A stretch of 64,000 nt of DNA, taken from the NCBI RefSeq assembly GCF_046119375.1, contig NW_027362772.1, positions 75,206,001 through 75,270,000 on the forward strand, given 5' to 3'. Source of the DNA: Phyllobates terribilis. Its lineage: Eukaryota. Every line of letters starts with the position of its first letter. The first letter of the stretch is position 1. The position numbers and the translations under genes are program-made. Positions 1 to 59,503 of this stretch are shown here, piece by piece. The notes under the pieces were generated by a model. The model was not told the DNA's origin. It saw nothing but the letters and a program-made list of their open reading frames with translations, and searched no databases.

Positions 1-1080
1 GAACCAGCCTTCATTGCCAGATCCCGCAGCCCACATAGACGTCACCTAAACTGCAGGCACCATAGAGTCGGCTAACCCGACCGCAACACGACAGGACAAC
101 GCATTGGAGGCAAAGTGACGTTGACACTACCCGGAAACAGCTGGCGTGCTGGAACCAGGCTGGGCAGGAGGGAGTACCCGTGCCAAAGACACTGCCGAGA
201 ACCAGCTGACGGTACTGGAACCCGGATGGGTAGTAGAAGGTACAAGAGCCAATGGAACTGCCGAAGACCAGCTGACGGTACTGGAACTCGGTTACTAAGC
301 AGGAGGTACCTGTGCCAGAAAGCACTACCAAGGACAAGCAGACGTTGGTGGAACTTGGATACCGAGAAGGAGGCACCTAATCCAAAGGCACTGCCGAGAA
401 CCAGCTGACGGTACTGGAACCCGGATGGGTAGCAGAAGGTACCCATGTAAAAAAAAGTTCAAGGCCGCAAGCCGGCCGCAGTTACCAAAACCCACAGTCC
501 TACCGGGGGTGCTTGTCCTATTGGCACTATGGAACCAGCCTTCATTGCCAGATCCCGCAGCCCACATAGGAGTCACCTAAACTGCAGGCACCATAGAGTC
601 GGCTAACCCGACCGCAACACGACAGGACAACGCATTGGAGGCAAAGTGACGTTGACACTACCCGGAAACAGCTGGCGTGCTGGAACCAGGCTGGGCAGGA
701 GGGAGTACCCGTGCCAAAGTCACTGCCGAGAACCAGCTGACGGTACTGGAACTCGGATGGGTAGTAGAAGGTACAAGAGCAAATTGAACTACCGAGGACC
801 AGCTGACGGTACTGGAACCCGGATGGGTAGCAGAAGGTACAAGAGCCAATGGAACTGCCGAAGACAAGCTGACGGTACTGGAACTCGGTTACTAAGCAGG
901 AGGTACCTGTGCCAGAAAGCACTACCAAGAACCAGCAGACGGTGGAACTTGGATACCGAGAAGGAGGCACCTAATCCAAAGGCACTGCCGAGAACCAGCT
1001 GACGGTACTGGAACCCGGATGGGTAGTAGAAGGTACAAGAGCAAATGGAACTACCGAGAACCAGCTGGCGGTGCTGCAAC
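1..1080. repeat. Tandem array of ~66-bp subunits organised as a ~531-bp higher-order duplication, inside hAT element A
   Basis: Core CCGAGAACCAGCTGACGGTACTGGAAC recurs at ~66-nt spacing (e.g. 192/258 and 723/789/855). Positions 1-470 recur at 532-1060, and near-identical spurious ORFs are offset by 531. Confidence 0.9.
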
Positions 1081-3727
1081 CCAGGGTAAATACTAAAAAC
1101 AGAGTGGATCCAGAGGTGTAATTGGAGCAAGTTTTAAATCAGTAGTACAGTGGATGTGGACAAAGCAGGAGAATTTGCCGGACACACAGCAGGGGAACAG
1201 CTGACGTTACTGAATCCCAATAACACTGGAGCAAGCGTTGACTGTGCAGACGGCACTTCTGAGCAGCAACTAGCGGTATTGGAGCCCAGGGTAAATACTA
1301 AAAACAGAGGAGCCAGAGGTGTATTTGGAGGAGGTTTTAAATCAGTAGTACAGTGGATGTGGACAGAGCAGGAGAAATTGCCGTCCGCACAGCAGGGGAA
1401 CAGCTGACGTTACTGAACCCCAATAACACGGCAGCAAGTGTTGACTGTGCAGACGGCACTTCCGAGCGCCAACTGGCGGTGTTGGAGCTCAGGGATAATA
1501 CTGAAAACAGAGGAGCCAGAGGTGTAATTGGAGCAACTTTAAAATCAGTAGTAGTGAGAATGTGGACAGAGCAGGAGAAATTGCCGTCCGCACAGCAGGG
1601 GAACAGCTGACGTTACTGAACCCCAATGACACGGCAGCAAGTGTTGACTGTGCAGATGGCACTTCCGAGCACCAACTGGCGGTGTTGGAGCTCAGGGATA
1701 ATACTGAAAACAGAGGAGCCAGAAGTGTATTTGGAGGAGGTTTTAAATCAGTAGTACAGTGGATGTGGACAGAGCAGGAGAAATTGCCGTCTGCACAGCA
1801 GGGGAACAGCTGACGTTACTGAACCCCAATAACACGGCAGCAAGTGTTGACTGTGCAGACGGCACTTCCGAGCGCCAACTGGCGGTGTTGGAGCTCAGGG
1901 ATAATACTGAATACAGAGGAGCCAGAGGTGTAATTGGAGCAACTTTAAAATCTGTAGTAGTGAGAATGCGGACAGAGCAGGAGAAATTGCCGTCCGCACA
2001 GCAGGGGAACAGCTGACGTTACTGAACCCCAATGACACGGCAGCAAGTGTTGACTGTGCAGACGGCACTTCCGAGCGCCAACTGGCGGTGTTGGAGCTCA
2101 GGGATAATACTGAAAACAGAGGAGCCAGAAGTGTATTTGGAGGAGGTTTTAAATCAGTAGTACAGTGGATGTGGACAGAGCAGGAGAAATTGCCGTCCGC
2201 ACAGCAGGGGAACAGCTGATGTTACTGAACCCCAATAACACGGCAGCAAGTGTTGACTGTGCAGACGGCACTTCCGAGCGCCAACTGGCGGTGTTGGAGC
2301 TCAGGGATAATACTGAAAACAGAGGAGCCAGAGGTGTAATTGGAGCAACTTTAAAATCTGTAGTAGTGAGAATGTGGACAGAGCAGGAGAAATTGCCGTC
2401 CGCACAGCAGGGGAACAGCTGACGTTACTGAACCCCAATGACACGGCAGCAAGTGTTGACTGTGCAGACGGCACTTCCGAGCGCCAACTGGCGGTGTTGG
2501 AGCTCAGGGATAATACTGAAAACAGAGGAGCCAGAGGTGTAATTAGAGCAACTTTAAAATCTGTAGTAGTGAGAATGTGGACAGAGCAGGAGAAATTGCC
2601 GTCCGCACAGCAGGGGAACAGCTGACGTTACTGAACCCCAATAACATGGCAGCAAGTGTTGACTGTGCAAACGGCACTTCCGAGCGCCAACTGGCGGTGT
2701 TGGAGTTCAGGGATAATACTGAAAACAGAGGAGCCAGAGGTGAATTTGGAGGAGGTTTTAAATCAGTAGTACAGTGGATGCGGACAGAGCAGGAGAAAGT
2801 GCCGTCCGCACAGCAGGGGAACAGCTGACGTTACTGAACCCCAATAACACGGCAGCAAGTGTTGACTGTGCAGATGGCACTTCCGAGCGCCAACTGGCGG
2901 TGTTGGAGCTCAGGGATAATACTGAAAACAGAGGAGCCAGAGGTGTAATTGGAGCAACTTTAAAATCAGTAGTAGTGAGAATGTGGACAGAGCAGGAGAA
3001 ATTGCCGTCCGCACAGCAGGGGAACAGCTGACGTTACTGAACCCCAATAACACGGCAGCAAGTGTTGACTGTGCAGACGGCACTTCCGAGCACCAACTGG
3101 CGGTGTTGGAGCTCAGGGATAATACTGAAAACAGAGGAGCCAGAGGTGTAATTGGAGCAACTTTAAAATCTGTATTAGTGAGAATGTGGACAGAGCAGGA
3201 GAAATTGCCGTCCGCACAGCAGGGGAACAGCTGACGTTACTGAACCCCAATGACATGGCAGCAAGTGTTGACTGTGCAGACGGCACTTCCGAGCACCAAC
3301 TGGCGGTGTTGGAGCTCAGGGATAATACTGAAAACAGTGGAGCCAGAGGTGTAATTGGAGCAACTTTAAAATCTGTATTAGTGAGAATGTGGACAGAGCA
3401 GGAGAAATTGCCGTCCGCACAGCAGGGGAACAGCTGACGTTACTGAACCCCAATGACATGGCAGCAAGTGTTGACTGTGCAGACGGCACTTCCGAGCGCC
3501 AACTGGCGGTGTTGGAGCTCAGGGATAATACTGAAAACAGAGGAGCCAGAGGTGTAATTGGAGCAACTTTAAAATCTGTAGTAGTGAGAATGTGGACAGA
3601 GCAGGAGAAATTGCCGTCCGCACAGCCGGGGAACAGCTGACGTTACTGAACCCCAATGACACGGCAGCAAGTGTTGACTGTGCAGACGGCACTTCCGAGC
3701 GCCAACTGGCGGTGTTGGAGCTCAGGG
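1050..3727. repeat. 203-bp tandem repeat, ~13 copies, in the 3' region of hAT element A
   Basis: Unit (...GGGAACAGCTGACGTTACTGAACCCCAAT...GGCACTTCCGAGCGCCAACTGGCGGTGTTGGAGCTCAGGG...) repeats with period 203. Repeat-derived ORFs start at 1150, 1353, 1759, 2165, 2774 etc. Confidence 0.97.
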
Positions 3728-3792
3728 ATTACAGTTGAGGTGGTAGAAACATGAACAGAACAGGAGACCTGGATACTTTTGCCAACAATTAT

Positions 3793-6700
3793 TTATTCTG
3801 GAAGAGGACTGGCAAATTCATGAGAGATCCAGGCCTTGTTCATTATGAGAAAAGTAAGCCGGTCAACGTTATCGGAGGATAGTCGCATGCGACAGTCTGT
3901 TAGTACACCACCTGCGGCACTAAAGACGCGTTCCGATAATACACTAGCAGCAGGGCAAGCTAGCACCTCCAATGCATACTGACTTAGCTCTGGCCATGTA
4001 TCTAGCTTACAGACCCAAAACTTGAAGGGAGAAGAGCCGTCTGGGAGTACACTAAGAGGGCAAGACTTGTAGTCTGTCAGCATCTGACGGAAACGTTGCC
4101 TCCTGCTGACTGGAGCCGTCTGTGATGGTGTAGACATTTGTGGCGGCGGGGACACAAAACTTTGCCACATTTCGGCCATACTGGTCTTGCCTTGTGCTGA
4201 GGCGCTGCTTCTTCTCCCTCTTTGTGCAGAGCTTCCTCCACTGCCTTGACGCACTGAGCTGCTTTGTAAAGCACTAGCAGCACTGCTCTCGGTTGGAATG
4301 GAGAACATGATGGAATGCACCAGTGCGTCTTGGTACTCCCGCATTTTACGCTCCCGGTTCAACGGTGTTATGAGGCTTTGTAAGTTGTCCCGGTAGCGAG
4401 GATCTAGGAGGGTGGACACCCAATAATCAGCCGTGTTGAGAATGTGGGCGATGCGGCGGTCGTTTCTCAGGCACTGCAGCATGAAATCAACCATGTGCTG
4501 CAGACTGCCAACTGGCCAAGAAACGCTGTCCCCTGCTTGAGGCGTGATCTCTGCCTGCTCTGCATCACCCCACCCTCGCTCTAGATACTGACTACTAGAG
4601 CATTGTGTACCTCCCTCCTCTGGACAGATGTCTTCCTCATCCATTGACTCCTCCTCATCCTCCTCACAAAGTGTCCCCTGCCTAGGCCTTTGTGAGGAAC
4701 CACGTTGCGCAGACTGTAGAGAAGCAGATGGCATTTGTGACTCCTCATCCTCCACCTCTTCCAAAACCTCGTCCCTTAGTGCTTGCAGTGTTTTTTCAAG
4801 CAGGCAGATAAGGGGGATAGTCATGCTGACTAGTGCATCATCTGCACTCGCCATCCGCGTGGAATAATCGAAGGCACGCAAAACGTGGCAAATGTCCTTC
4901 ATAGAGGCCCACTCAGTGGTGGTGAAGTGTGAACGGCGCGCACTGCGACTTGTTTGCGCCTGCTGCAGCTGGTACTCCATTACTGCTGCCTGCTGCTCAC
5001 ACAACCTCTCCAACATATGTAACGTTGAATTCCACCTGGTGGGTAGGTCACATATGATGCGATGTTCCGGAAGACGTAATCGGCGCTGCAGAGCTGCAAT
5101 GCGTGATCTTGCATTGCTGGAACGCTGCAAGTGAGCGCACTCTATGCGGACCTTGTGAAGCAGTGCATCAAGATCCGGATAGTCCCTCAAAAAACTCTGC
5201 ACGACCAAGTTGAGCACATGTGCCAGACATGGGATGTGAGTGAGGTTGCCTAGGCCCAGAGCTGCCACCAGATTTCGGCCATTGTCACACACTACCATGC
5301 CTGGCTGGAGATTCGCTGGCACAAACCACACGTTGCTCTGCTGCTTGATGGCATTCCAGAGCTCCTGCGCTGTGTGGCTTCAATTCCCCAAAGAAATTAA
5401 TTTTAATACGGCCTGTTGACGTTTGGCCACGGCTGTGCTCATATTGGTCACCATAACAGGTAACCGTTCACGGGTCGATGTGGAGGTAGACCGTGACGGC
5501 TCCTGCAGCGCTGATTCAGAGGAACTGGAGTATGAGGAGGAGTCAATGTGTACAGACTGGATTCCTGCAATCCTTGGAGTTGGCAGAACACGTACAGCGC
5601 CACTCTCAAGATCTGTACCCGGCTCCACAACATTTACCCAATGGGCAGTGAGGGAAAGGTATCGTCCCTGTCCATGCTTACTGGTCCACGCATCGGTTGT
5701 CAGGTGGACCTTGCTACTGACGGCGTTTTGTAGCGCATGTTTAATTTTTCCCTCCACATGATGTTGCAGGGCAGGGACGGCTTGCCTGCTGAAATAAAAT
5801 CGGCTGGGCACGTTGTATTGTGGGACTGCCAATGCCATAAAGTTACGGAATGTGTCAGTCTCCACCAGCCTGAATTATAGCATTTCAAGGGCCAGTAGTT
5901 TAGCAATGCCAGCATTCAGAGCCTGTGCTCGGGGGTGGTTTGCCGAGTATGGGCGCCTTTTCTCCCATGCCTGTGCTAACGATGGCTGTAGACTGGCCTG
6001 GGAGTGTGAGGATGACTGGGAAAGTGGTGCTGTGGGTGGAATTACACTGTGTCTCTGTACAACAGTGCCAGAGATTCTTCCATGGCGATCCTGTGAGGAA
6101 GCCGAACCAGCTGTGTGTGAGCTGGAGGAAGAGGCTACAACACAAGCTGAAGAGGTGGTAGGTGGCGCTGTAGGTTGGCCTAGGTCTTCAGTGTGTTTTT
6201 GTAACTCCACCACGTGCTTGGTCCGCACATGTTTCCACATATTTGTGGTATTGAGGTTGCTGACACTTTTCCCTCTTTTCACCTTCTGATTACACAGCTT
6301 GCATTTGACAAAGCAAATGTCATCTGCAACTGTGTCAAAAAAGGACCAGGCACTGCAAGTCTTGGGAGCGCCCGCTTTGGATTTTGGAAGAGCCATGCTC
6401 CTAATGGGTGCCGAAGTGGAGGCTACAGGCAACCAAGTCTGCCCCCTCCCTCTCCCTCCTATTTGGGCTGTTCGGGGAATCTCTTCCTCAGAGCTGCTCC
6501 CACAACCTTCCTGTCCCTCACGCCATGATGGGTCAAGGACCTCATCATCTACACCACCCTCTTCAAACAACTGCTTCTCCTGGGTAGTCTCGACAGCACA
6601 GTACGCACCAGAAAGTGGCACCTGAGTCTCATCATCAGATGCGTACTGAGGTGTGCTGCTGACCATAGGCACTGGCCCACCCGCCTCTTCAGATTCAGAG

Positions 6701-6886
6701 AGACAAAACGGTTGCGCATCACTGCATACTACCTCTTCTTCAAATTCTCGAATTCTGCTTGGCTGGCCCCCTCTTTCCAAGCCAAGAGATTCAGAGAACA
6801 GAAGTAGAGATGGCTCCTGTCCAGGGCTCTCTGACTGCCTGGGCAATTTGGCAGGTGGTGAAGAGACAGATGGGTGCTCTTCAGTG
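3793..6886 (-). pseudogene. hAT transposase of element A, main part (BED zinc finger, DDE core, hATC dimerisation domain), with two in-frame nonsense codons
   Basis: ORFs 5875..7068, 5380..5865 and 3793..5331 share one frame, separated by TAA (5875-5877) and TGA (5380-5382). Motifs: AWSFF..C..C..(NMWKH)..KH BED finger, HLTTDAW, VCDNGRN, CLAHVLNLVV, PTRWNST, WPEL..YALEVLACPAASVLSERVFS. Confidence 0.95.
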
Positions 6887-7395
6887 CTCAGGACTAGTGT
6901 TGAGCCACCCCCGTAGTGTTCGAGTTCGGTTCGGTTCGTCGAACACCCGTGTGTTCGCCGAACTGTTCGTCGAACTGTTCGTCGAACACCTTCGAACACC
7001 GTTAAAACCAATGGCAGGCAAACAAAAACACATAGAAACACATAGAAAACACCTTCAAAGGTGTCCAAAAGCTGACAAACTGCTCAGAAGACACAACTAA
7101 CACATGGAAAAGTGACAAGTACATATAGTCATGCGAAAAGAAAAGAGGTGGAGGAGTAAAAGGAGGGGGAGACACAGATATAGGCATGTCATGCCCTTCT
7201 AAAATCCAAAAAGTGAGAAGCCGAGACGGCCAGTCCGCTCCTGCCCGTGCCACCTCCGTGTCGCCGGGTTTGTGCCAGAGGCGCGGTGGACCCTGACGGC
7301 CAGCCCCCCTCTCCCAATACTGGTGCCTGTCCGCTGGTGGGTCGAGAGAGCCCCCCTGTGGTGGAGGCAGCTCTAAGCTTTTTAATTTAAATTGT

Positions 7396-7672
7396 CCCTC
7401 TAATTTGAATGAATACACTTTAAATCCATTTACAAGGATCTATTGGAGGGCAAGTCTCATGCCAGCAGCCGCGTAATTCCAGCTCCAGTAGCGTCCACTA
7501 AAGCTGCTGCAGTTAAAAAGCTTTTATAAGGATCGAGCTCGGCTGTCCACCGCAAGGCATCCTAGTGCCAGTCCCAGCCCCTATGCCTTGGGGTGCCTCC
7601 TGATGCTCTTCACTAAGTATCCCGTGGTCCCGAAGCATTTCCTTTGAAAAAATTAAGTGTCCAAACTACAGG
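7396..7672 (+). pseudogene. Degenerate 18S rRNA fragment (around helix 18 to the start of V4) inside hAT B
   Basis: GAATGAATACACTTTAAATCC..GGATCTATTGGAGGGCAAGTCT..TGCCAGCAGCCGCGTAATTCCAGCTCC..GCTGCAGTTAAAAAGCT..GGATCGAGCT..GTCCCAGCCCCT..GATGCTCTT..CCCGAAGC..CTTTGAAAAAATTA matches vertebrate 18S as I recall it, with many substitutions and small indels. Confidence 0.93.
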
Positions 7673-7778
7673 TGGTGTAGCTTGCTTAACAGCCGGGATA
7701 ATCCGCTGACTAGCAGACACTGCTACTAGGCACAAAGTATTTCCTGGGCTAGATGCAGTTAAAAATTTGTAAGTAGAT

Positions 7779-9595
7779 ACTCTCGTTGGATGCTGAGAAA
7801 GCATTCCATAGAGTCTCCTGGCACGCCATATATGATTCTCTTAAAAAGCTTGGGGTAGGGGTCTAGGGGACCCTTTTATAGCCAAAATCACGGCCCTGTA
7901 TCACAATACGTCACCTAGGCTGAAGATAAATGGAACTGTAGCACCGAGGGCTCGGTTGCTACAGACGTATTGCACCTCACCCAGAGGTGTGATATCTCAC
8001 TCTCAGATAAGGATGGAGTGTGGATCAGGACCCGACACCTGCATACATTACACCACATTGCCGTGGGGCAGGGCGACCAATATGCCCCTGAGATGGGCAC
8101 GACAGTCCCTGTCCCTGGCTGGAGTGGGGGGAGGGAACACTGAGGAAGGGGAACCCTGCAGTGCAGGAGCAGGGAGGAAGCAGTTCCTGGGTGCATTGAG
8201 AAGGGAGTATAAAAGGTGGGCACCATCTTAGTTCAGTGCAGAGAAGTCTGAGCAGAAGTGGCAGGGAGCAGGGGCTCTGCATGAGCTCTGCTCCGGAGGC
8301 GGGCCTAGTAACAGAGGCCCAGGCCTGCAAGAGGGAGAAGGAAGGAAGAGGAGCGGAGAAGGCTCCAGGAACGAGGAATGAAGGGATCCCAGGGGTGCGG
8401 ACGGGCGAGTCGCCACCGCACGCCCGAATCCACCTGCGTGGAGGGGTCAGGCCAAAGGGGGAGACCGGTCCCCGAACTAGTGGAGGCAGGAAACGACCCT
8501 CAGCTAGAAACCGGAGGCTCTGACATTTTATGTGGCGCAGCCCCTTGCTCCACCCGCTAGGAAGGCACCACATAGGGTCAGGGAAACTGGCGCCAAGTTT
8601 ACCAAGAGGAGGCCCGAGGCAGCCGGACAGAAGTGTTGGTAAGAAAGGCCAGACAAAGGACACACAAAGGGGGTCCTGTGAAGCGCTCCAAAGTTATCTG
8701 GGAGTTGTCTGAGCCCCTCACCTGGTGAGCACAGTACGACGTGGGCAGCCGTTACCTGCAGACGTGGTCTGGATAATAAGAACTGTGAGTAAAGGCCCTG
8801 AACTGCATCACTGACTCCGTGTCGTTACTGCTGCTGCCCTGCACCATCACCCCCATCCTCCGCATACACTGCCCTGAGGCTATACTCCTCCCGTGGGGAG
8901 TTATGCTACGCTCTGCTGCACCCACAACACCAGCCTTAGCGGTCTGCCCTGTAGCGGCGGTTCACTCTGACCGCAATCCACGGGTGGCGTAGTCGGACAT
9001 TTAAACATCAAAACCACATAAATAGTTCCGCCACTGGTTTGACCGCCCTGAGCCACGGAACCGGATCGCCGCCACGAAGACTACAACCACCAGCATCCAC
9101 CAAAAAGTGTCCGGCTCCGGGTGTCCCAAGGCCCAGGGGGTGCGTCAGAACATTTTCATCACCTTTCACAATCACCAATGGGACAAGGCAGGGATGTCCT
9201 CTGTCCCCTCTCTTATACATCCTAGTGACGGAGCACCTGCTCTCATCAATTCGCCATAACCCCAATATTAGGTGGATTGAGGTGGGAGGCACCGAGTACA
9301 AGTGCTCTCTATTTGCTGATGATGTCCTAGTATATATCACTCAATCACATATATCCATCCCTGCTGTTATGGCTGAAATAGATCACTTTGTTACATGGTA
9401 AAATTTTAAAATCAATGCAGCGAAGTCTGAGGCCCTCGATGTCTCCCTCCCTAAATCCATATAGGATTCCATCCAGTCCAACTTTCCCTTTGCCTGGCCC
9501 TCACAGGGTATCAAATACTTAGGAATTCCTATTCATAGAGACCTCTCCCATCTATGTTATCTTAATTTTGGGCCCTTTATTGAACAATTCCATAC
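7779..9595 (+). mobile_element. L1-clade LINE ORF2 reverse-transcriptase fragment (7779-7936 plus 9152-9595), truncated at both ends and split by a solo LTR
   Basis: Translation across the LTR: LSLDAEKAFHRVSW...RLKINGT|FSSPFTITNGTRQGCPLSPLLY...SLFADDVLVY...KINAAKSE...IKYLGI. No poly(A) tail. Confidence 0.9.
7937..9147 (+). mobile_element. Solo LTR (1211 bp) with 4-bp TSD, inserted in the L1 fragment
   Basis: TGTAGCACC...GGGTGCGTCA termini, GAAC on both sides (7933-7936, 9148-9151), TATAAAA at 8208-8214. The 3' ~350 bp are homologous to the LTR at 57874-58895. Confidence 0.9.
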
Positions 9596-9598
9596 AGA

Positions 9599-11160
9599 CC
9601 ACGGTTGGCAAGTTAGAACTATAAGATTCACTACGTGAACCACTGGTGTTTTGTGGAAAAGCACATGTACACCGCGTTCCAAATTATTATGCAAAAAGTG
9701 TTTAGGAGTGATAAGGGAAGAATTTGTTTGTTTGTCAGTTAAACTCATTGATGGTGATGTGTGTCAGGGCTCTTTATATCACTGTAAGCAATTGCAGACA
9801 CCTGTGCTAATTAGTTTGGCAGGTGTGTCCAATGAAAGGCAAGACTACTTAAGAAGGCTCTCTCACATTATTAAGCAGCCTACATTTTCTGCCAAAATGG
9901 GAAAGAAAAAGGATGTGTCGGCTGCTGAGAAGCAACAAATTGTGGAGTGTTTAGGTCAAGGCATGACTACAATCAACATTGTGCGATGATCAGGATGAAG
10001 TGTCTTGGCAATCAAGAAGTATGTAGCTGATTCACAGTACACACGTGTGCGTGCTGATAAGGGCAAATTGAGGACTCTTTCCTACAGGCAATTACGTCAG
10101 GTTGAAACAGCAGCGGCAAAAAAGCCTTGTCATAGCAGCAGACAAGTTTTTGAAGCTGCTTGTGCCTCCAACGTCCCCCGAACAACAAGATGCAGGGTCC
10201 TTCAGAGGTTTGCAGCTGTGCATATGCCATCCTGTCGACCTCCTCTATCCACTTCACACAAGCAGAAACGGCTCCAGTGGGCCAAACATTACATGAAGAC
10301 TGATTTCAAAACTGTTTTGTTCACGGATGAGTGCCGTGCAGCGCTCGATGGTCCAGATGAATGGAGTGGAGGATGGCTGGTTGATGGACACCCCACGCAA
10401 ACACGGCTACAGCACCAACAAGGAGGAGGTGGAGTAATGTTTTGGGCTGGAATCATGGGGAGAGAGATTGTCGGCCCCTTTAGGATCCCTGAAGGCGCTA
10501 AAGATGAACTCCATAATGTATGTGGATTTTCTCAAACAGCACTTCCTGCCATGGTTCAAGAAGAAGAACCGTGTATTTCACAGCAAGATCATTTTTCTGC
10601 ATGATAATGCACCATCTCATGCTGCACATAAAACATCTGCATCTCTGGCTGATATGGGCATAAAAGGGGACAAACTTATGGTGTGACCCCCATGCTCCCC
10701 TGACCTCTACCCCATTCAGAACCTTTGGAGCATCATTAAAAGGAGTGTCTATGATGGCGGGAGGCAGTTCACATCTAAGCAACAGCTCTGGGAGGGTATT
10801 CTGTCCTCATGCAAAACAATTGAAGCAGAAACCATCCAAAACCTGACAAATTCAATGGACGAGAGAGTTCAGAAGCTCCTTTCGAACAAGGGGTCCTATG
10901 TGAAAATGTAACATCACCTAGAATAAAGTTTTGAGTTGAAAACTGTTTGATTTCAGTTTCTAACAACCTGCTAATGCTTATAATTTCAAAAATGACCATT
11001 TTTTTGGTCTTTATTAAAATGAAAAGGTTGATCGAAAAGTTTGGGGGATCTAAGAGTGTGGCAACCCAGTAGTCATGATTACTTCGAATTCTGACAATAT
11101 GAGGGTCATGCTGCAGGTAGTGCAGCAAGAAGGCACTTATGTGTCTTGCGCATCTCGGAG
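9599..11160 (-). pseudogene. Second, diverged fragment of a B-like hAT transposase (9599-9669 plus 11045-11160), interrupted by a Tc1 element
   Basis: 9599-9669 aligns to 11820-11891 and 11045-11160 aligns to ~11980-12096. Translation LLHYLQHDPHIVRIRSNHDYWVATLLDP versus LLHYLQHDPRIVRIRNNPDYWVATLLDP in the intact ORF. Confidence 0.88.
9670..11040 (+). mobile_element. Tc1-like DD37E (TRT-type) transposon, defective, right TIR deleted; transposase remnant 9897-10911
   Basis: TA then TIR CACCGCGTTCCAAATTATTATGCAAA. Motifs LFTDECR, QGGGGVMFWAG, HDNAPSH...SPDLYPIQ with 37 residues between the second D and the E position (mutated to Q). Frameshifts and a TGA in place of W. Confidence 0.85.
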
Positions 11161-11368
11161 CCCCAAAATTATTTTCCGGGCTAGATGCAGCTAAAAATTA
11201 TTTTTAATTTTAAATCTGGTGAAGCTTATTATAGATGGCCTAATAGGATCAGTGCTGCACACTGCTACAAAGCCCAAATTATTTTCCAGTCAAGATACAG
11301 ATAAACATGATTAGTAATTTGAAAGCTTAAAACGGTTGGTAGGGTGATTTTAACCAATCATCAAGCTT

Positions 11369-14300
11369 TTACTCTCCCCAGGATGACACAGGGGTAGAAA
11401 AGTCGTTTCGGATCCATGATTTGTTCATCTTTATGAACGTGAGTCTGTCTACATTATCAGTGGAGAGCCGCGTGCGCTTATCTGTCAGCACACCACCAGC
11501 AGCGCTGAACACACGTTCAGACAGAACGCTGGCTGCGGGGCATGACAAGATCTCCAAGGCGTAAGTGGCTAGCTCCGGCCATTTATCCAGATTGGAAGCC
11601 CAAAAAGAGCAAGGGTCCAGTGACACAGTCGTGGCTTCAATGTTTACTTGGAGATACTCCTGTACCATCGTCTCTAGGCGTTGACTATGTGTCAGACTTC
11701 TTGTCTCCTGTGGCCTTGCAAAGGATGGGCTAAAAAAGTGGTGAAATGATTCCGCAAAATTGATGTTACCAGCAGATACTGTGGTTCTGTTACGGTTTGA
11801 GTGCTGAACACTTGACGGTCCCACGGTTGGCAAGTTGGAACTGTGAGATTCACTACGTGCACCACTGGTATTTTGTGGAAAAGCACATGTAAGATTCTGC
11901 AACAGTCTCTGCTGATACTCCTGCATGCGTGCATCCCTTTCTATGGCAGGAATAATTTCTGCAAATTTACTTTTGTACCGGGGATCTAACAGTGTGGCAA
12001 CCCAGTAGTCAGGATTATTTCTAATTCTCACAATTCGAGGGTCATGTTGCAGGTAGTGCAGCAAGAAGGCACTCATGTGTGTTGCGCATCCAGGAGCACC
12101 AAGTCCCTGTTGTGTTGGTGGCGAGGTAACAATCATGCTTCCTTCCTCTGTCCTCTCCCCCCAACCTCGCACAACAGAAATGTGATCAAAGTCTCCCTCA
12201 TCTGATGAGTCTTCCATCAGTTCGTCCTCCACTTCTTCCTGGGCTCCTGCACCTTCCTCACTAGTTTGGCTGCTACCATGCGCCCTGGTAAAACCATCTC
12301 CCCCACCCTCACATGCCTGCCGCCTTGGTGCTGCCGACCGTCTGGACCTTGCAGATGTTAGCCCTTCCGCATACAACTCCTCCTCCTCTACTTCCTCCAC
12401 CTCCTCTTGTGCCACCACCTGACTCCGAATTCTGTTTAACATGTGCTCCAGCATGTAAATCACCGGAATAGTCATGCTGATAATGGCATCGTCAGCACTA
12501 AACATCTTCGTCGCCATTTCAAAACTGTGCAGAAGGGTGCATAGGTCCCTGATCTGAGACCACTCCTCCAGCGTGATTTGCCCCACCTCTGAATCTCGTT
12601 GGCCCAGGCTATACGTCAGAACGTATTGCACCAGGGCTTGTCGGTGCTGCCACAGTCGCTGCAACATGTGCAGAGTTGAATTCCACCGGGTAGGCACATC
12701 GCATTTTAGCCGGTGAAGTGGCAGGCCCAACGACTTCTGTAGAGATGTAAGTCGTTGAGCTGCGGGATGCGAACGGCGGAAGTGAGCACACAGCGACCGT
12801 GCCCTCTGCAGAAGGCCATCTAGTCTGGGATAGTGGGCTAAAAATTGCTGGACAACCAGGTTCAACACGTGAGCCATACAAGGCACGTGTGTGACATTGC
12901 CCCGGCGAAGGGCCGCACCCAGGTTTGCAGCATTGTCGCACACGGCCTTCCCTGGTTTCAGGTCCAGTGGAGACAACCATTCATGAAATTGGTTCTCCAG
13001 AGCTGACCACAACTCCTCAGCTGTGTGACTCACATTTCCCAGACATTTCAATGTAAAAACCGCCTGATGACGTTGAGCCCTACTGCCAGCATAGTAAGGA
13101 GGTGTGCAGGATCCCTTCTGTGCAGTTAGAAAGCTTGTGGCATGACCAGACAGGCTTTGGGTGCAGGTGGAAGACCGAGAGGAGGTTGAGGAGGCAGAAG
13201 CAGTGGAGGAACTTTGACATAAAGAGGATTGACGCACAACTCGTGGGGACGGCAAGACTTGGACAGCAGCCCCTTGTCCTGCTGTCACCATAGTTACCCA
13301 GTGCCCAGTCAGCGACATGTAACGCCCCTGTCCATGCCTACTCGTCCAAGTGTCTGTGGTGAAATGCACCCTGTCACACACAGAGTTTCTCAAAGAAGCG
13401 GTGATGTTGTGTGCGACATGCTGGTGGAGCGCAGGCACACCTTTCTTTGAGAAGTAGTGCCGACTGGGCATCTGGTACTGGGGCACTGCGACGGACATAA
13501 GGTCTCGAAAATCCTCTGTGTCCACCAGGCGGAAAGGCAGCATTTCTGTAGCCAAGAGCTTGCAGATGGTGAAATTCAACCTCTTAGCTTTCTCATGGCT
13601 AGGAGGAAATGGTCTTTTACTTGTCCACATCTGAGGGACCGAGGGCTGGCTATTGTGCTTAGACGGGGTTGATAAGGGTGTCCCCGGCAAACTGACGGTC
13701 TGTGAGGAAGATGCAGGCGGACATGTTAGGTTGCCTTGATCCAAAGGTGGTGCTATCGATGTCGGACAGCGCTCAACACCAGCTGGTGTTACCACCTCCA
13801 AAGAAAATGATGACCTGCCAATCACGCTGGCTGTTGCGGGTAAAGAGGTGGCAGGTCTGCGCCCCAAAACAGGTGTGACTGCTGTCCCCCCAGTCACAGA
13901 GGATGAAGAGGCCGCGGATGCACAAGATATGGCAGACGGCGATTGGCCCAGCCGGCTAGACCGCATTGTAGCACACTGAGCTTCCCACTGCAACTTATGC
14001 TTCATGTCCATGTGCCGGTTCATGCATGAAGTACTCAAACTATGTATTTTTTGGCCTCTACTTAGCTTTTGCTGACAAATGTTACAGATAACACGAGTTG
14101 GGTCATCTTTATCGATCTGAAAAAATGCCCAGGCTATGCAAGGCTTAGCACCCATGCGACCTGAAGAGCCACCACGACTTGTGGTGAGAGGCAGAGTTGT
14201 GTTTGAGGATGCAGTTGTTGACGTGCTTCCAGTACTACGTCTCTGTCCAGGAAGGCGCAACCTGACCTCGTCGTCACTAGCATCTTCCTCCACCTCCTCT

Positions 14301-15049
14301 GCTGACCTCATCTCTTGGCTGACTGTGGGTTGACAGTAAGTGGGATCTCCGACCTCATCATCATCACCCTGTGCGTTATCACACCCGTCGTCCTCAGAGC
14401 CAACCTGTTCCTGCCCTGACAAAAAACTAAAGTTGTCGCTCCAATCAGGTATTTGAGTCTTATCATCGTCTTCCTCATTGTCTCCACCAACAGGAGTTAC
14501 AGTTTGGGAATGAGGGTCTACATTATGGTCAGAACCTTCTGCGTCTGGTCCTGGATCCGACTCATAAAGATTCTGGGCATCAGTGCAGATCATTTCCTCG
14601 TCTGGATTCACAGAAGCGCTGGAGTCGACCTCTGATTCCCAGGCTATAGTATGAGTAAACAGCTCTGCAGACTCAACCATCTGTTCTACCTCATACTCAG
14701 ACGGGCAGCTGGAGATTTGGGAGCTGTGAGGAAGCAAGTGCGATTTGGGTGACACCTTTGAGGACTGGAGTATTTGTGATGTTGAAGTTGATGTGGAGGA
14801 GAGCCCACTTAAAGGAGCACTTGATATCCGTTGAAGCACCTGCTGTTTTTGTGCCTCATCTGGAATTTGTAGCGATTGGCGTGGCCGTAAGAAAGGGATC
14901 TTATCACATTGTCCGCTAAAAGAAGTAGACATTTTAGTTTGGCTGGAAGATGGTCTTTCTTCTGCACCTACCCCACGGACACAACCTTTTTTCCCCTTCC
15001 CAACACGCCTATTCCCCTTTCCACCAGCAGCAGGCCTTTTTCCACTCAT
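11369..15049 (-). CDS. Intact hAT transposase (1226 aa, ZBED-like): basic N-terminus, acidic region, BED finger, RNase-H-fold DDE core, hATC domain
   Basis: Uninterrupted ORF. BED finger AWAFF...CNIC...CMNRHMDMKH. Catalytic motifs HFTTDTW, VCDNAAN, CMAH (CxxH), PTRWNST and SERVFS. C-terminal WPELATYALEILSCPAAS. Confidence 0.95.
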   Translation of the reverse strand: MSGKRPAAGGKGNRRVGKGKKGCVRGVGAEERPSSSQTKMSTSFSGQCDKIPFLRPRQSLQIPDEAQKQQVLQRISSAPLSGLSSTSTSTSQILQSSKVSPKSHLLPHSSQISSCPSEYEVEQMVESAELFTHTIAWESEVDSSASVNPDEEMICTDAQNLYESDPGPDAEGSDHNVDPHSQTVTPVGGDNEEDDDKTQIPDWSDNFSFLSGQEQVGSEDDGCDNAQGDDDEVGDPTYCQPTVSQEMRSAEEVEEDASDDEVRLRLPGQRRSTGSTSTTASSNTTLPLTTSRGGSSGRMGAKPCIAWAFFQIDKDDPTRVICNICQQKLSRGQKIHSLSTSCMNRHMDMKHKLQWEAQCATMRSSRLGQSPSAISCASAASSSSVTGGTAVTPVLGRRPATSLPATASVIGRSSFSLEVVTPAGVERCPTSIAPPLDQGNLTCPPASSSQTVSLPGTPLSTPSKHNSQPSVPQMWTSKRPFPPSHEKAKRLNFTICKLLATEMLPFRLVDTEDFRDLMSVAVPQYQMPSRHYFSKKGVPALHQHVAHNITASLRNSVCDRVHFTTDTWTSRHGQGRYMSLTGHWVTMVTAGQGAAVQVLPSPRVVRQSSLCQSSSTASASSTSSRSSTCTQSLSGHATSFLTAQKGSCTPPYYAGSRAQRHQAVFTLKCLGNVSHTAEELWSALENQFHEWLSPLDLKPGKAVCDNAANLGAALRRGNVTHVPCMAHVLNLVVQQFLAHYPRLDGLLQRARSLCAHFRRSHPAAQRLTSLQKSLGLPLHRLKCDVPTRWNSTLHMLQRLWQHRQALVQYVLTYSLGQRDSEVGQITLEEWSQIRDLCTLLHSFEMATKMFSADDAIISMTIPVIYMLEHMLNRIRSQVVAQEEVEEVEEEELYAEGLTSARSRRSAAPRRQACEGGGDGFTRAHGSSQTSEEGAGAQEEVEDELMEDSSDEGDFDHISVVRGWGERTEEGSMIVTSPPTQQGLGAPGCATHMSAFLLHYLQHDPRIVRIRNNPDYWVATLLDPRYKSKFAEIIPAIERDARMQEYQQRLLQNLTCAFPQNTSGARSESHSSNLPTVGPSSVQHSNRNRTTVSAGNINFAESFHHFFSPSFARPQETRSLTHSQRLETMVQEYLQVNIEATTVSLDPCSFWASNLDKWPELATYALEILSCPAASVLSERVFSAAGGVLTDKRTRLSTDNVDRLTFIKMNKSWIRNDFSTPVSSWGE

Positions 15050-15159
15050 TTTGGTGGTTAACTAATTCACAACTCTGGAGTTGTTTGCACAAAAAAACAA
15101 TGGATGGTAACCGAGCAGAGCTGAGTGGCCAAACTGTGGTATTAGGCCAAAACTATTGG

Positions 15160-15672
15160 CTGGGCTAGATGCAGAAAAAAATTATTTTTAATTTGCAACC
15201 TGATGGAGGTCAGTATAGATGGACTAATAGAACAAGTCCCACACGCTGCTAGAAGCCCAAATATTTTTTCAGAGATAAATGAAGAAAAAAATTATTTTTA
15301 ATTTGCAACCTGATGGAGGTCAGTATAGATGGACTAATAGACCAAGTCCCACACACTGCTAGAAGCCCAAATATTTTTTCAGAGCTAGATGCAGAAAAAA
15401 ATTATTTTTAATTTGCAACCTGATGGAGGTCAGTATAGATGGACTAATAGACCAAGTCCCACACACTGCTAGAAGCCCAAATATTTTTTCAGAGCTAGAT
15501 GCAAAAAAAAATTATTTTTAATTTGCAACCTGATGGAGGTCAGTATAGATGGACTAATAGACCAAGTCCCACACACCGCTAGAAGCCCAAATATTTTTTC
15601 AGAGCTAGATGCAGAAAAAAATTATATTCAGTTTGCAACCTGATGGAGGTCAGTATAGATGGACTAATAGAA
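15160..15672. repeat. 110-bp tandem repeat (~4.7 copies) upstream of the B transposase; single or partial copies at ~7700-7770 and ~11165-11290
   Basis: CTAGATGCAGAAAAAAATTATTTTTAATTTGCAACCTGATGGAGGTCAGTATAGATGGACTAATAG... at 15165, ~15275, 15385, 15495 and 15605. Confidence 0.93.
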
Positions 15673-16144
15673 TGATGCTATGCCCAAAAGATTTTACTTA
15701 ACTAGGTGCAGTAAAAAAATTGGTATTCTATACACAGGTGGTATATCTTGCAACACAGATAGGCTACTCCACTGACTAACACACTCTGCAATAGGCCAAA
15801 AAGGATTAGCTTTGCTAGATTCAGCCAAATGCTGTGAAAAAAACTTGCACAGCACTGGCACAGACCTGCCTGGCAAAAACTGATAGGAACTGATGTAACC
15901 TAGTCCTGAAAAGGACTCCAATTACAATTAGTCTTTACTCCCACAATCTATCTATTTAAGAGCACAGACCTGCCTGATAAAAGTCGTAGGAAATGCTGTA
16001 ACCTAGTCCTTAAAAGGACTGCAATCACAACTATTCCCTACTCCCAAGCTATCTGTATATTTGTGCGAAAATTGGCTTGAAATTAACAAGGTATAGCGCA
16101 CACAGCAACAGCGGTGCCGTCTAACACGCAGCTGCAGCAGTGAG

Positions 16145-16211
16145 AAAATGGTGGCGACGGGGAAAATGGCTTGGTCTTATAGGGCAAGGACATGTGACAT
16201 ACACTGCCAAT
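16145..16211 (-). promoter_or_regulatory. Putative Pol II promoter of the B transposase (inverted CCAAT, TATA-like, YY1-like)
   Basis: Minus strand reads ATTGG (16207-16211), TATAAGA (16176-16182), GCCATTTT (16163-16170). Same order and spacing as in element A. Confidence 0.5.
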
Positions 16212-16588
16212 CACACATGCCCTTGCTTGTGTGAAAAAAAGCACTTCGCTCCGTGTGTGCGCTGCTGATAGGCTGACAGATTGCACCTCCCCACTGCAAA
16301 TGCGGGAAAGAGAAAAAAAAATGGAGATCTTCATTGTTCCTGCAGAGATCCATCCCCTGCCCCTCCCCCCGCCCCGCTGTACACTCAAACTGCGTATTAA
16401 CATTAATTTTCATCATTACTGAGAAAAAATCCAGTTATGATTTTGGTGCACGAACAGTTATCGAACATAACCTCGAACAGCCGAATTTTTCTCAAATTGT
16501 TCGTGTTCGCCGACCGGCTCGAACACCGCCCAAAACAGCTCGAATTTGAGATTGGCGAACAGTTCGAGTAGAACAACGCTCATCTCTA

Positions 16589-16893
16589 CTCAGGACCTGA
16601 GAGGATCTGGAACTAATTGAAGTCGATGCGTTAGCTGCCATCCATCCGACAACGGCTTCAATTTGGTCCTCCCGCAGCAGTGGGGTACGGCTAGCTCCTA
16701 CAAAGCTGCGCATAAAGGACTGTTCCCTGGTAAAACTGGGCGATGCTGAGTCACTGGTGCCCGCAGCAGGCACAGAATCCCCACGTCCTCTCCCTGCAGG
16801 CACAGAATCCTCACGTCCTCTCCCTGCAGAAACTCCACGCCCACGTCCACGCCCACGCCCACGACCACATGCCTTATTCCCTGCCTTCTTCAT
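16589..16893 (-). pseudogene. N-terminal part of the element A transposase, separated from the rest by insertion of element B
   Basis: MKKAGNKACGRGRGRG...SSRSSQVLS joins in phase to VLSTEEHPSVSSP at 6894 once B and one TSD copy are removed. The reconstructed frame is 3399 nt (1132 codons plus stop). Confidence 0.9.
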
Positions 16894-57805: not shown

Positions 57806-59503
57806 AAGTCTCTCTCCTGTGGAGTGTAAGCTCTTATTGTCAACGGGGTCCACTCTCTCCTGTAGAGTGTAAGTGACTCGCCCCCTGGGCCGTGGAGTAC
57901 CCAGAACCGGGCCTTCTTGTGTACGGTGCTGATGGGGGTAGTAGTGGCAACCTGGTCCCATGGCTCAGGGCAGTCAGACCAATGTTGTGGCAGTCTATTT
58001 ATAGATTTGTGAATATCTGACTACGCCACCCGTGGATTGCGGTCAGGGATAACTGCCACTGCGAGGCAGACCGCTGAGGCTGGTGTTGGTGTGCAGCACA
58101 GGGGTAGGATAACTCCCCACGGGAAGAGTGTAGCCTCAGGGCAGTGTAGGTGGATGCTGGGGGTGATAGTGCTGGCCGCAATAGTAAAAGTTCAGAGCCC
58201 GTTTCAAAACAGTTCTGGGTCTTTATTGTAGATGTTATTAATGACCCAACAGTAGTACCGGTTAGGAATGGGCCTGGGTATCTGAGAGAATTCGGGGAAC
58301 CCCACTGGTCAGGGTGAGTGTGTAGGCCTACCGTTCTCTCTATGCTCTTTCTGACTATCCCCCTCTTCGTGGTGTAATAGCCCACGTCCCTGAGCTGGCC
58401 GTGTACTTCTCGCCCGTATGGCTTGCGACTCGGGCCTTGGGTACCTTTTGCTTTCTCCTCGCTGTACTGGTCCCTCTGTGTGGCGGAGCCTCCAGGCTTC
58501 TTAGGCCAAGGGACTTGAAATCCCTCGCGGGTTGGTTCTCTGCTGCTGGGCTTATAACCCTGACAGCCTCGGACCCCAATGTCCGGTTGTGTGATTCTCT
58601 CAGCCAGGATCGGCTCTCGTCGCCTCTGTCCCTGGCTCGCAGTCTCTCCTCTGCCTCACGGACTCCTCAGCTGCTGCTGACCTGTCCCTTTTCTCTGAGA
58701 ACCCTTCTGGTCACTACAGAAGTGGGTTCTGGTCTCTCTAACCCTGCCCCAGTTCCAGCTTTTATAGGGCAGCCCACTCCCCCTACTGGCCTGGGACAGG
58801 AGGTGCTGCATGCTAATGGTCCCTAAACCAGGGAACCTCCCTCCTGCTCTCAGACACAGATTATTATTTGTGGCATCCAGGCCTGGGGTGACACATAAGC
58901 TCCTATGGTCAGTGTGGTCCTCTCTCTCTTTCTCCTGTAAAGTGTAAGCTCTTATTGTCAATGGGGTCCCCTCTCTCTCTCTTTCTCCTGTAGAGTGTAA
59001 GCTCTTATGGTCAGTGGGGTCCTCTCTCTCTCCTGTAGAATGTAAGATCTTATGGTCAGCGGGGTCCTCTCTCTCTCCTGTAGAGTGTAAGCTCTTATGG
59101 TCAGCGGGGTCCTCTCCTGTAGGGTGTAAGCTCGTATGGTCAGTGGGTTCCTCTTTCTCTTCTGTAGAGTGTAAGCTGTTATGGTCAGCGAGGTCCTTAC
59201 TCTCCTGTAGAGTGTAAGCTTTTATGGTCAGCAGGGTCCTCTCTCTTCTGTAGAGTGCAATCTCTTATGGTCAGTGGGGTCCTCTCTCTCTCTCCTGTAG
59301 AGTGTAAGCTCTTATGGTCAGCGGGGTCCTCTCTCTCCTGTAGAGTGTAATCTCTTATGGTCAGCGGGGTCCTCTCTCTCTCCTGTAGAGTGTAAGCTCT
59401 TATGGTCAGCGGGGTCCTCTCTCTCTCCTGTAGAGTGTAAGCTCTTATGGTCAGCGGGGTCCTCTCTCTCTTTCCTGTAGAGTGTAAGCTCTTATGGTCA
59501 GTG
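57806..59503. repeat. ~39-53-bp minisatellite resembling an L2/SINE 3'-tail motif, split by a solo LTR (~1.5 units before, ~13.5 after)
   Basis: Unit TAGAGTGTAAGCTCTTATGGTCAGCGGGGTCC(TC)nCTG. Confidence 0.92.
57874..58895 (-). mobile_element. Solo LTR (1022 bp), related to 7937-9147, with 4-bp TSD
   Basis: Minus strand reads TGTGTCACCCC...GGGGGCGAGTCA. TAAG on both sides (57870-57873, 58896-58899). TATAAAA on the minus strand at 58760-58766. Confidence 0.92.

What the first reader, a model, noticed from the sequence alone, without database searches (positions are those of the whole stretch)
7396..7672. 18S rRNA fragment carried inside a TIR/TSD-bounded hAT with an intact transposase
About 280 bp of 18S rDNA, including the universally conserved TGCCAGCAGCCGCG helix-18 motif and an amphibian-type V4 start, lies ~500 bp inside one end of element B, antisense to the transposase. 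If it is a fixed part of the family, a DNA transposon is dispersing rDNA-derived sequence. That could produce antisense or small RNAs against rRNA, act as homology bait, or confound 18S qPCR and metabarcoding. The fragment itself is seen in the sequence; being a heritable family component is inference.
Basis: partly seen in the sequence, partly recalled or inferred. Interest (0 to 1): 0.78.

Follow-up and report, generated by a model that had tools for sequence, protein, structure and literature searches.

The report
Frog hAT transposon carrying 18S piece
A decayed 274-base piece of the frog's own 18S ribosomal RNA gene sits as passive stowaway DNA inside a young, apparently still autonomous cut-and-paste (hAT) transposon; related copies in another poison frog carry a different scrap at the same spot, so this is an unusual cargo of a known kind of capture, not a working RNA.

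Summary
Window 7394-7667 (+) is a real fragment of eukaryotic 18S rRNA (Rfam SSU model positions 491 to about 782; 95.5 bits, E 1e-26). It starts 499 bp inside the left end of a 9.7-kb hAT element (6895-16588) with a perfect 8-bp duplication, CTCAGGAC. It lies antisense to an open 1226-aa transposase gene.

The piece is a pseudogene. The universal 530-loop is mutated and has lost one base. It has no poly(A) tail and no target duplication of its own.

It is too decayed, about 8-9% at near-invariant sites, to have been copied from working rDNA after this young copy inserted. It was therefore inherited and moved with the element.

It is not a fixed part of the family in the broad sense. Three independent copies in Ranitomeya imitator (about 87% identical) hold a reverse-transcriptase scrap in the same slot and no 18S.

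The scan has noted the same 18S-in-hAT arrangement before in at least ten other windows of this genome.

Most likely this is filler DNA captured during break repair next to the element's 110-bp repeat array. It is a known kind of event with an unusual cargo and of modest interest.

The parts
6887..6894 (.). Left copy of the 8-bp target-site duplication CTCAGGAC of hAT element B
   Evidence: Identical to 16589-16596.
6895..7220 (.). Left terminal inverted repeat (TAGTGTTGAGC...) and subterminal region of element B, with GTTCG/CGAAC motifs. This is the 3' end relative to the transposase gene.
   Evidence: Aligns at 79-89% to the ends of R. imitator copies L001, L002 and L005 up to '...CCTTCTAAAATC(C/A)A(A/G)AAAG' at about 7213-7220. 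Homology stops there.
7221..7392 (.). GC-rich filler (64.5% G+C) of unknown origin, just upstream of the 18S piece
   Evidence: No Rfam family at E<=10 apart from chance-level hits. No match in the window or in six frog loci. Composition.
7394..7667 (+). Decayed 18S rRNA gene fragment: helix 18 / 530 loop through V4 to the start of the following conserved stretch
   Evidence: Rfam SSU_rRNA_eukarya, model positions 491 to about 782, 95.5 bits, E 1.1e-26; 63 bits in the whole-window scan. About 12 substitutions and 2 one-base deletions at highly conserved consensus positions.
7668..7770 (.). One unit of the element's own 110-bp repeat, abutting the 18S piece
   Evidence: 74-82% identical to units in R. 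imitator copies and to 15734-15824 of the window. Junction alignment A2.
7771..11144 (.). Further cargo block. It holds an L1-type RT scrap (9039-9398, +), a decayed Tc1-like transposase gene (about 9650-10910, +) and two duplicated bits of B's own transposase gene (9599-9669 and 11044-11166).
   Evidence: RVT_1 E 8.3e-11. HTH_Tnp_Tc3_2 E 4e-4. Internal duplicates at 93% and 89% identity. The block is absent from R. imitator copy L001.
11145..11364 (.). Two diverged 110-bp units just downstream of the transposase stop codon
   Evidence: Repeat family D1; blastn to 15147-15673 at 75-78%.
11369..15049 (-). Open 1226-aa hAT transposase ORF
   Evidence: zf-BED E 4e-10 and Dimer_Tnp_hAT E 2e-14. 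Hermes transposase structures E 3e-19. 87.8% nucleotide identity to R. imitator L001 over its full length.
15129..15678 (.). Array of five 110-bp units upstream of the transposase start codon
   Evidence: Repeat family D1, 87-91% identity between units.
16577..16588 (.). Right terminal inverted repeat; its reverse complement reads TAGAGATGAGCG
   Evidence: Matches the left TIR at 9 of the first 12 bases.
16589..16596 (.). Right copy of the target-site duplication CTCAGGAC

Best explanation
The 18S piece is dead filler DNA. In an ancestor of this hAT lineage, a double-strand break in the element was repaired by copying from the wrong templates. The break arose either after excision or at a stalled fork in the 110-bp repeat array. 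About 170 bp of GC-rich DNA and about 274 bp of 18S sequence were copied into the gap between the 3' subterminal region and the repeat array. The new strand then re-annealed at a unit boundary, where 18S and the repeat share a short similar stretch (AAA.CAGG). The insert lies inside the TIRs and harms neither the ends nor the transposase gene, so every later cut-and-paste event has carried it along, including the one that made this copy. It decays neutrally and has no function of its own.

Shown: the anatomy, the pseudogene state, the lack of retroposition hallmarks, the different filling of the slot in R. imitator, and that the decay is older than the copy.

Inferred: the repair mechanism, and spread to many copies in this genome.
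For: (1) It is a real 18S fragment, truncated at both ends and damaged at universally conserved sites.

(2) It lies inside a complete hAT with a perfect 8-bp TSD, TIRs and an open BED + hAT-dimerisation transposase.

(3) It has no poly(A) tail and no flanking duplication of its own (sequence).

(4) Age argument. A 3681-nt ORF stays open with probability 0.26 at 1%, 0.07 at 2%, 0.001 at 5% and 0 of 3000 trials at 8% neutral substitution. The 18S piece differs from Rfam's near-invariant consensus at about 12 positions and has 2 one-base deletions over about 150 such positions. Most of that decay therefore predates this insertion.

(5) Three independent R. imitator copies keep both flanks but carry an RT scrap in the slot (RVT_1 E 8e-6). 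They are 91-94% alike there, which shows that filler in this slot is inherited within a lineage.

(6) The 3' junction lies where the 18S consensus 'UcAAAGCAGGc' and the unit tail 'GGTAAACAGGCGG' are alike.

(7) The same element holds duplicated, displaced bits of its own transposase gene. These are traces of template switching.

(8) Published precedent: filler DNA in Ac/Ds (PMC3260210), and captured host fragments with breakpoint microhomology in animal TIR elements, including a multicopy frog hAT case (PMC8277862).

(9) Earlier scan notes report the same arrangement in at least ten other windows of this genome. These are unchecked leads.
Against: No second copy from the source genome could be examined here, so inheritance within this genome rests on the age argument and on unchecked notes.

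The source of the GC-rich part is unknown.

The microhomology is short and only one junction could be judged.

Which filling of the slot is ancestral, RT or 18S, is unresolved. The outgroup copies (Anomaloglossus L004, R. variabilis L003) are truncated before the slot.

Copying from rRNA or cDNA rather than from rDNA cannot be told apart from DNA-templated capture.
Confidence: 0.75

Rival explanations
1. One-off event. Only this copy holds the 18S piece, picked up from an already old 18S pseudogene during or just before its last transposition. The family does not spread it.
For: Three R. imitator family members lack it.
Against: It needs an old, decayed donor pseudogene in addition to the capture. 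The R. imitator copies show that filling of this slot is inherited within a lineage. Earlier scan notes list the same 268-286-bp piece in hAT copies in at least ten other windows.
Confidence: 0.07
2. RNA-templated capture. The filler was copied from abundant RNA (18S rRNA here, retroelement mRNA in R. imitator) by a reverse transcriptase during break repair, not from chromosomal rDNA.
For: Both known fillings of the slot come from very abundant or RT-associated RNAs: 18S and an RT gene. An L1 RT scrap also lies in the cargo block.
Against: There is no poly(A) tail and no TSD. The GC-rich partner matches no known RNA. Nothing in the sequence distinguishes a DNA template from an RNA template.
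Confidence: 0.12
3. Functional cargo. Read antisense from the transposase transcript, the 18S piece would yield antisense or small RNAs against rRNA, tether the element to the nucleolus or rDNA, or act as recombination bait.
For: It is antisense to the transposase gene, so read-through would give antisense 18S. It is reportedly kept in many copies (notes).
Against: It is about 8-9% diverged at invariant sites, with indels. Here it lies 3.7 kb downstream of the stop codon, behind other debris. The sister lineage does without it and has an unrelated scrap in its place.
Confidence: 0.04
4. Assembly artefact: an rDNA-like read was misjoined into a repeat.
For: The region is highly repetitive, with nested transposons and arrays.
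Against: The piece is heavily diverged from real 18S, which is not what a chimeric rDNA read would look like. The flanks match the family structure seen in another species on both sides. The whole element has a perfect TSD.
Confidence: 0.02

Closest known systems
Pack-TIR elements of animals (Tan et al. 2021, PMC8277862), e.g. Pack-hAT-N8_XT of Xenopus tropicalis with a 291-bp CAPSL 5'UTR fragment in three copies
   Same: A frog hAT element with TIRs and 8-bp TSD holds a roughly 280-bp host-derived fragment. There is short microhomology at a breakpoint. The proposed origin is template switching during gap filling, followed by transposition.
   Different: The carrier here still has an open transposase ORF, so it appears autonomous. 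The reported cases are mostly single-copy and the frog example sits in a short non-autonomous element. The cargo is rDNA-derived rather than from a protein-coding gene, and it comes with other debris (L1 RT, Tc1, bits of its own gene).
Filler DNA in maize Ac/Ds derivatives (Du et al. 2011, PMC3260210; abortive gap repair, Rubin and Levy 1997, cited from my own knowledge)
   Same: These are hAT superfamily elements in which internal sequence is replaced by foreign DNA between intact ends. The filler comes from genes, retrotransposons or other transposons.
   Different: The Ds-like elements have lost the transposase and mostly do not move. Here the filler sits beside an intact gene, and the composite has moved.
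rRNA-derived repeats such as 5S-derived SINE3 and 28S-derived SINE28 (from my own knowledge, not checked here)
   Same: Ribosomal RNA sequence is dispersed through the genome by a mobile element.
   Different: Those are retroposed through RNA, and the rRNA part supplies promoter or body function. Here a DNA transposon carries an inert internal fragment.
Processed rRNA pseudogenes (LINE-mediated retroposition)
   Same: A truncated, decayed rRNA copy lying outside the rDNA array.
   Different: No poly(A) tail and no target-site duplication of its own. It is bounded by transposon sequence on both sides.

Membership tests
hAT superfamily DNA transposon (element B, 6895-16588) | 8-bp target-site duplication | tested here: met
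   CTCAGGAC at 6887-6894 and 16589-16596, identical. The R. imitator copy L001 has CCAAGGAC / CCAATGAC.
hAT superfamily DNA transposon (element B, 6895-16588) | Short terminal inverted repeats | tested here: met
   TAGTGTTGAGCC against TAGAGATGAGCG, 9 of 12. The same left TIR occurs in R. imitator copies.
hAT superfamily DNA transposon (element B, 6895-16588) | Transposase with BED zinc finger and hAT C-terminal dimerisation domain, related to Hermes | tested here: met
   PF02892 E 4.2e-10 and PF05699 E 2.1e-14. Hermes transposase chains E about 3e-19. The ORF is open over 1226 aa. Catalytic residues were not checked.
Functional eukaryotic 18S rRNA gene | Full-length (about 1.8 kb) match to the SSU model | tested here: not met
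   Only model positions 491 to about 782 of 1831 are present.
Functional eukaryotic 18S rRNA gene | Universally conserved 530-loop sequence intact | tested here: not met
   GGUGCCAGCAGCCGCGGUAAU reads CAUGCCAGCAGCCGC-GUAAU, with two substitutions and one deletion.
Pack-TIR / transduplicating DNA transposon | Host-derived non-transposon sequence between TIRs, with the whole bounded by a TSD | tested here: met
   The 18S piece at 7394-7667 lies inside 6895-16588.
Pack-TIR / transduplicating DNA transposon | Several copies with the same cargo and different TSDs (mobilised cargo) | not testable with these tools
Only unchecked scan notes and the indirect age argument bear on this.
Pack-TIR / transduplicating DNA transposon | Microhomology at capture breakpoints | tested here: inconclusive
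   At the 3' junction, 18S and the unit tail share AAA.CAGG. The 5' junction cannot be judged because the GC-rich donor is unknown.
Pack-TIR / transduplicating DNA transposon | Non-autonomous carrier (as in the published sets) | tested here: not met
   The carrier keeps an open 1226-aa transposase ORF.
LINE-retroposed rRNA pseudogene | 3' poly(A) tail and its own flanking target-site duplication | tested here: not met
   The 3' end runs straight into the 110-bp unit. The only A-run is 18S's own GAAAAAAUU. The flanks 'CCAAAAAG' and 'GGTGGTGT' are unrelated.

The most novel reading that the evidence does not exclude
The gap between the 3' subterminal region and the 110-bp repeat array of this hAT family may be a recurrent capture hotspot. 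It would be refilled independently in different poison-frog lineages with copies of abundant cellular RNAs: 18S rRNA here, retroelement RT mRNA in Ranitomeya. That would be RNA-templated break repair feeding cargo into an autonomous DNA transposon, which then spreads thousands of rRNA-like copies. A bolder form is that the antisense 18S part is used by the element or the host, for example through small RNAs.
Probability: 0.08. Interest if true: 0.65.

Novelty: new member of a known kind. Interest (0 to 1): 0.3.

Why it matters
It is a clear vertebrate example of an apparently autonomous DNA transposon carrying host-derived filler. Here the fixed sequence of 18S acts as a built-in clock for dating the capture.

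If the scan notes are right that the subfamily is abundant, 18S-like fragments outnumber true 18S genes in this genome. That matters for repeat masking, rRNA annotation and read filtering. It matters little for standard V4 amplicons, since one primer site is damaged and the other is absent.

The 18S-for-RT swap between two poison-frog lineages gives a marker for tracing the history of the hAT subfamilies. It also offers a natural case for studying how repair next to tandem arrays loads cargo into transposons.

Tried and rejected
- **Sequencing reads.** No read depth, copy number, expression or small-RNA evidence could be had, and read laying was not used.
- **Exact-product look-ups.** The transposase and ORF 7005-7418(-), which spans left end, GC-rich part and 18S start, are not on record.
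- **Exhaustive HMMER search.** The same ORF searched against 1.84 billion representatives gave only one low-complexity hit.
- **Pattern scans.** Scans for the diagnostic 18S variant in metagenome and viral contigs, and for the 18S/unit junction in metagenome contigs, found 0 matches.
- **Earlier findings.** Look-ups by sequence and by relatives came back blank.
- **Third protein search.** Not spent. One search found no Logan-derived protein above 50% identity to this transposase, so the source species is evidently not in that collection.
- **Retroposed pseudogene.** Rejected: no poly(A) tail and no TSD.
- **GC-rich 7221-7392 as rRNA.** No Rfam support. An ITS or ETS origin remains untestable.
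- **Tc1 decay as an age marker.** Rejected, because defective Tc1 copies can insert fresh.
- **Outgroup copies.** R. variabilis L003, Anomaloglossus L004 and R. imitator L006 are truncated before the slot and say nothing. The Phyllobates terribilis locus (P0003) gave no DNA.
- **Real vertebrate 18S from metagenomes.** Deliberately not fetched, to avoid handling possibly human rDNA. Divergence was therefore measured against Rfam's consensus only.

Full report
**Observation**

A scan of the whole 64-kb window against Rfam gives one hit above a gathering score. It is SSU_rRNA_eukarya at 7375-7494 on the + strand, 63 bits against a cut-off of 50, E 2e-14. When 7386-7700 is searched alone, the match rises to 95.5 bits, E 1.1e-26. 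It covers model positions 491-816. Posterior probability is high from about 7394 (just before 'AAUGA') through the 530 loop, the V4 region and the conserved 'UUGAAAAAAUUAGAGUGUUCAAAGCAGGC' stretch, which ends near 7667.

It is a pseudogene piece. Only model positions 491 to about 782 of 1831 are present. At positions that the eukaryote-wide consensus marks as highly conserved, I count about 12 substitutions and two one-base deletions. Among them, GGUGCCAGCAGCCGCGGUAAU has become CAUGCCAGCAGCCGC-GUAAU. No frog 18S reference was available from any tool. The 'amphibian-type V4' claim therefore rests only on my memory of vertebrate V4 sequences, and I leave it untested.

**The carrier**

Element B runs from 6895 to 16588.
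- It is flanked by an identical 8-bp duplication, CTCAGGAC, at 6887-6894 and 16589-16596.
- Its ends are TAGTGTTGAGC... and, in reverse complement, TAGAGATGAGC....
- On the - strand it carries an open ORF of 1226 aa (11369-15049) with a BED zinc finger and the hAT dimerisation domain. The ORF is similar to the Hermes transposase, E about 3e-19.
- It sits inside the transposase gene of another, broken hAT (3793-6894, continuing after 16597).
- Arrays of a 110-bp repeat flank the transposase gene on both sides: 11145-11364 and 15129-15678.

The 18S piece starts 499 bp inside the left end, with its sense strand opposite to the transposase gene.

From left to right, the left arm consists of:
- the TIR and subterminal region (6895-7220);
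- a GC-rich stretch of unknown origin (7221-7392);
- the 18S piece (7394-7667);
- a single 110-bp unit (7668-7770);
- a 3.4-kb block of debris (7771-11144).

The GC-rich stretch has no Rfam match and no match elsewhere. The debris block holds an L1-type reverse-transcriptase scrap (9039-9398; RVT_1 E 8e-11) and a decayed Tc1-like gene. It also holds two displaced duplicates of B's own transposase gene: 9599-9669 matches 11821-11891, and 11044-11166 matches 11980-12102.

**Is it a retroposed pseudogene?**

No. The 3' end of the piece runs straight into the 110-bp unit. There is no poly(A) tail beyond 18S's own A-run, and the sequences on either side of the GC-rich-plus-18S insert are unrelated.

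**Relatives elsewhere**

Protein searches with the transposase found its closest kin in dendrobatoid frogs. These are Ranitomeya imitator, R. variabilis, Phyllobates terribilis and Anomaloglossus baeobatrachus, mostly as exons of chimeric gene models. Six loci were fetched.

L001 of R. imitator holds a complete copy, 87.8% identical over the transposase gene, with TSD CCAAGGAC / CCAATGAC. L002 and L005, on other contigs, keep the left arm.

In all three, the left subterminal region aligns with the window up to '...CCTTCTAAAATC(C/A)A(A/G)AAAG'. The alignment resumes at the start of the 110-bp unit, 'GG(C/T)GGTGTAGCTTGC'. Between these points the R. imitator copies hold about 600 bp of a reverse-transcriptase gene fragment (RVT_1 E 8e-6). 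The copies are 91-94% alike in that fragment. None of them has any trace of 18S by Rfam or by blastn. The window in turn has no trace of that RT fragment.

The 18S piece is therefore not a fixed part of the family across frogs. It is one of two alternative fillings of the same slot, and each is apparently stable within its own lineage. The copies from R. variabilis and Anomaloglossus, and the copy in L006, are truncated before the slot, so the ancestral state is unknown.

**Was the piece inherited by this copy?**

No other copy from the source genome could be reached (see 'What I could not do' below), so I used an internal clock.

A DNA transposon copy is not under selection after insertion, so an open 3681-nt ORF means youth. 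In a simulation on this ORF, it stayed open in 26% of trials at 1% substitution, 7% at 2%, 0.1% at 5% and none of 3000 at 8%. The simulation ignored indels.

The functional 18S gene does not change at its near-invariant sites, yet the piece differs there by about 8-9% and has indels. Most of this decay must therefore predate the insertion at 6887-6894. The piece either came in with the element already decayed, or was taken from an old free pseudogene at the last moment. The second option needs an extra assumption.

This shows that the 18S piece has been moved by transposition at least once. It fits earlier notes of this scan, which report the same 268-286-bp piece in hAT copies, antisense to the transposase, in at least ten other windows of this genome. 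One note describes it together with an L1 RT fragment and a 110-bp array. Those notes are unchecked AI notes, and I use them only as leads.

**Mechanism (inferred)**

The slot lies at the edge of a tandem array. At the right-hand junction, the 18S consensus 'UcAAAGCAGGc' and the tail of the preceding unit 'GGTAAACAGGCGG' share AAA.CAGG. The window reads 'CCAAACTACAGG|TGGTGTAGC' there.

The element also contains displaced duplicates of its own gene.

These are the marks expected of break repair with template switching. Repair synthesis leaves the element, copies stretches of unrelated templates, and re-anneals at a short similarity. This has been described for filler DNA in Ac/Ds (PMC3260210). 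It has also been described for captured fragments in animal TIR elements, where 68% have microhomology at a breakpoint. In that study a Xenopus hAT with a 291-bp gene fragment is one of only four multicopy cases among 370 (PMC8277862).

Whether the template was rDNA or rRNA/cDNA cannot be told. That both known fillings are abundant or RT-linked RNAs is suggestive but weak.

**Function**

Nothing supports one.
- The piece is short and damaged at invariant sites.
- In this copy it lies 3.7 kb downstream of the stop codon, behind other debris.
- The sister lineage carries an unrelated scrap in its place.
- The common V4 forward-primer site carries a deletion, and the fragment ends (model position about 782) before the usual V4 reverse-primer site. 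Standard V4 amplicons therefore cannot arise from it. The primer positions are from my own knowledge.

Two poison-frog transposon surveys do not mention rRNA inside hAT elements (PMC11152451 and PMC6278860).

**What I could not do**

- Exact-product look-ups found nothing.
- An exhaustive HMMER search with an ORF spanning the junctions found nothing relevant.
- Pattern scans of metagenome and viral contigs found nothing.
- Findings look-ups by sequence and by relatives came back blank.
- The source species is evidently absent from the protein collections.

**Verdict**

It is a new member of a known kind of event, with an unusual cargo and a useful comparative twist.

Noticed in passing
window 1-3729: A long tandem array with a 203-bp period. 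Units are 90-95% alike, with an older, more diverged part at 1-1080. It ends just before the broken hAT A.
   Followed up: no
window 3793-6894 and 16597 onward (- strand): The host element is a second, unrelated hAT. It has BED and dimerisation domains and its ORF is broken into pieces. Element B jumped into its transposase gene. After removing B and one TSD copy, the large ORF pieces lie in one frame.
   Followed up: partly
window 9599-9669 and 11044-11166: Two bits of element B's own transposase gene (matching 11821-11891 at 93% and 11980-12102 at 89%) lie downstream of the gene in the same orientation. A decayed Tc1-like element sits between them. This is a displaced internal duplication.
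   Followed up: partly
window 8825-9147 and 57874-58187: A roughly 320-bp stretch inside B's cargo block recurs in inverted orientation 49 kb away at 76% identity. It is probably part of another dispersed repeat.
   Followed up: no
L002 35150-35461 (R. imitator): One R. imitator copy has an extra insert of about 310 bp in its left arm, flanked by 'ATAGGCA' on both sides. It looks like a small secondary insertion.
   Followed up: no
P0001, P0002, P0008, P0029 (R. imitator); P0003 (P. terribilis): Public gene models named for CCDC80, chromo-domain, WD40 or C2 proteins include exons that are 75-89% identical to this hAT transposase. They are probably chimeric annotations that swallowed transposon ORFs.
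   Followed up: no
L001 19340-19945, L002 34452-35018, L005 11219-11789: The RT scrap in the R. imitator copies has the motif '...HYLDDF...' and reads like the RT of a DIRS/Ngaro-type retroelement. That assignment is my impression only; Pfam gives just RVT_1.
   Followed up: partly
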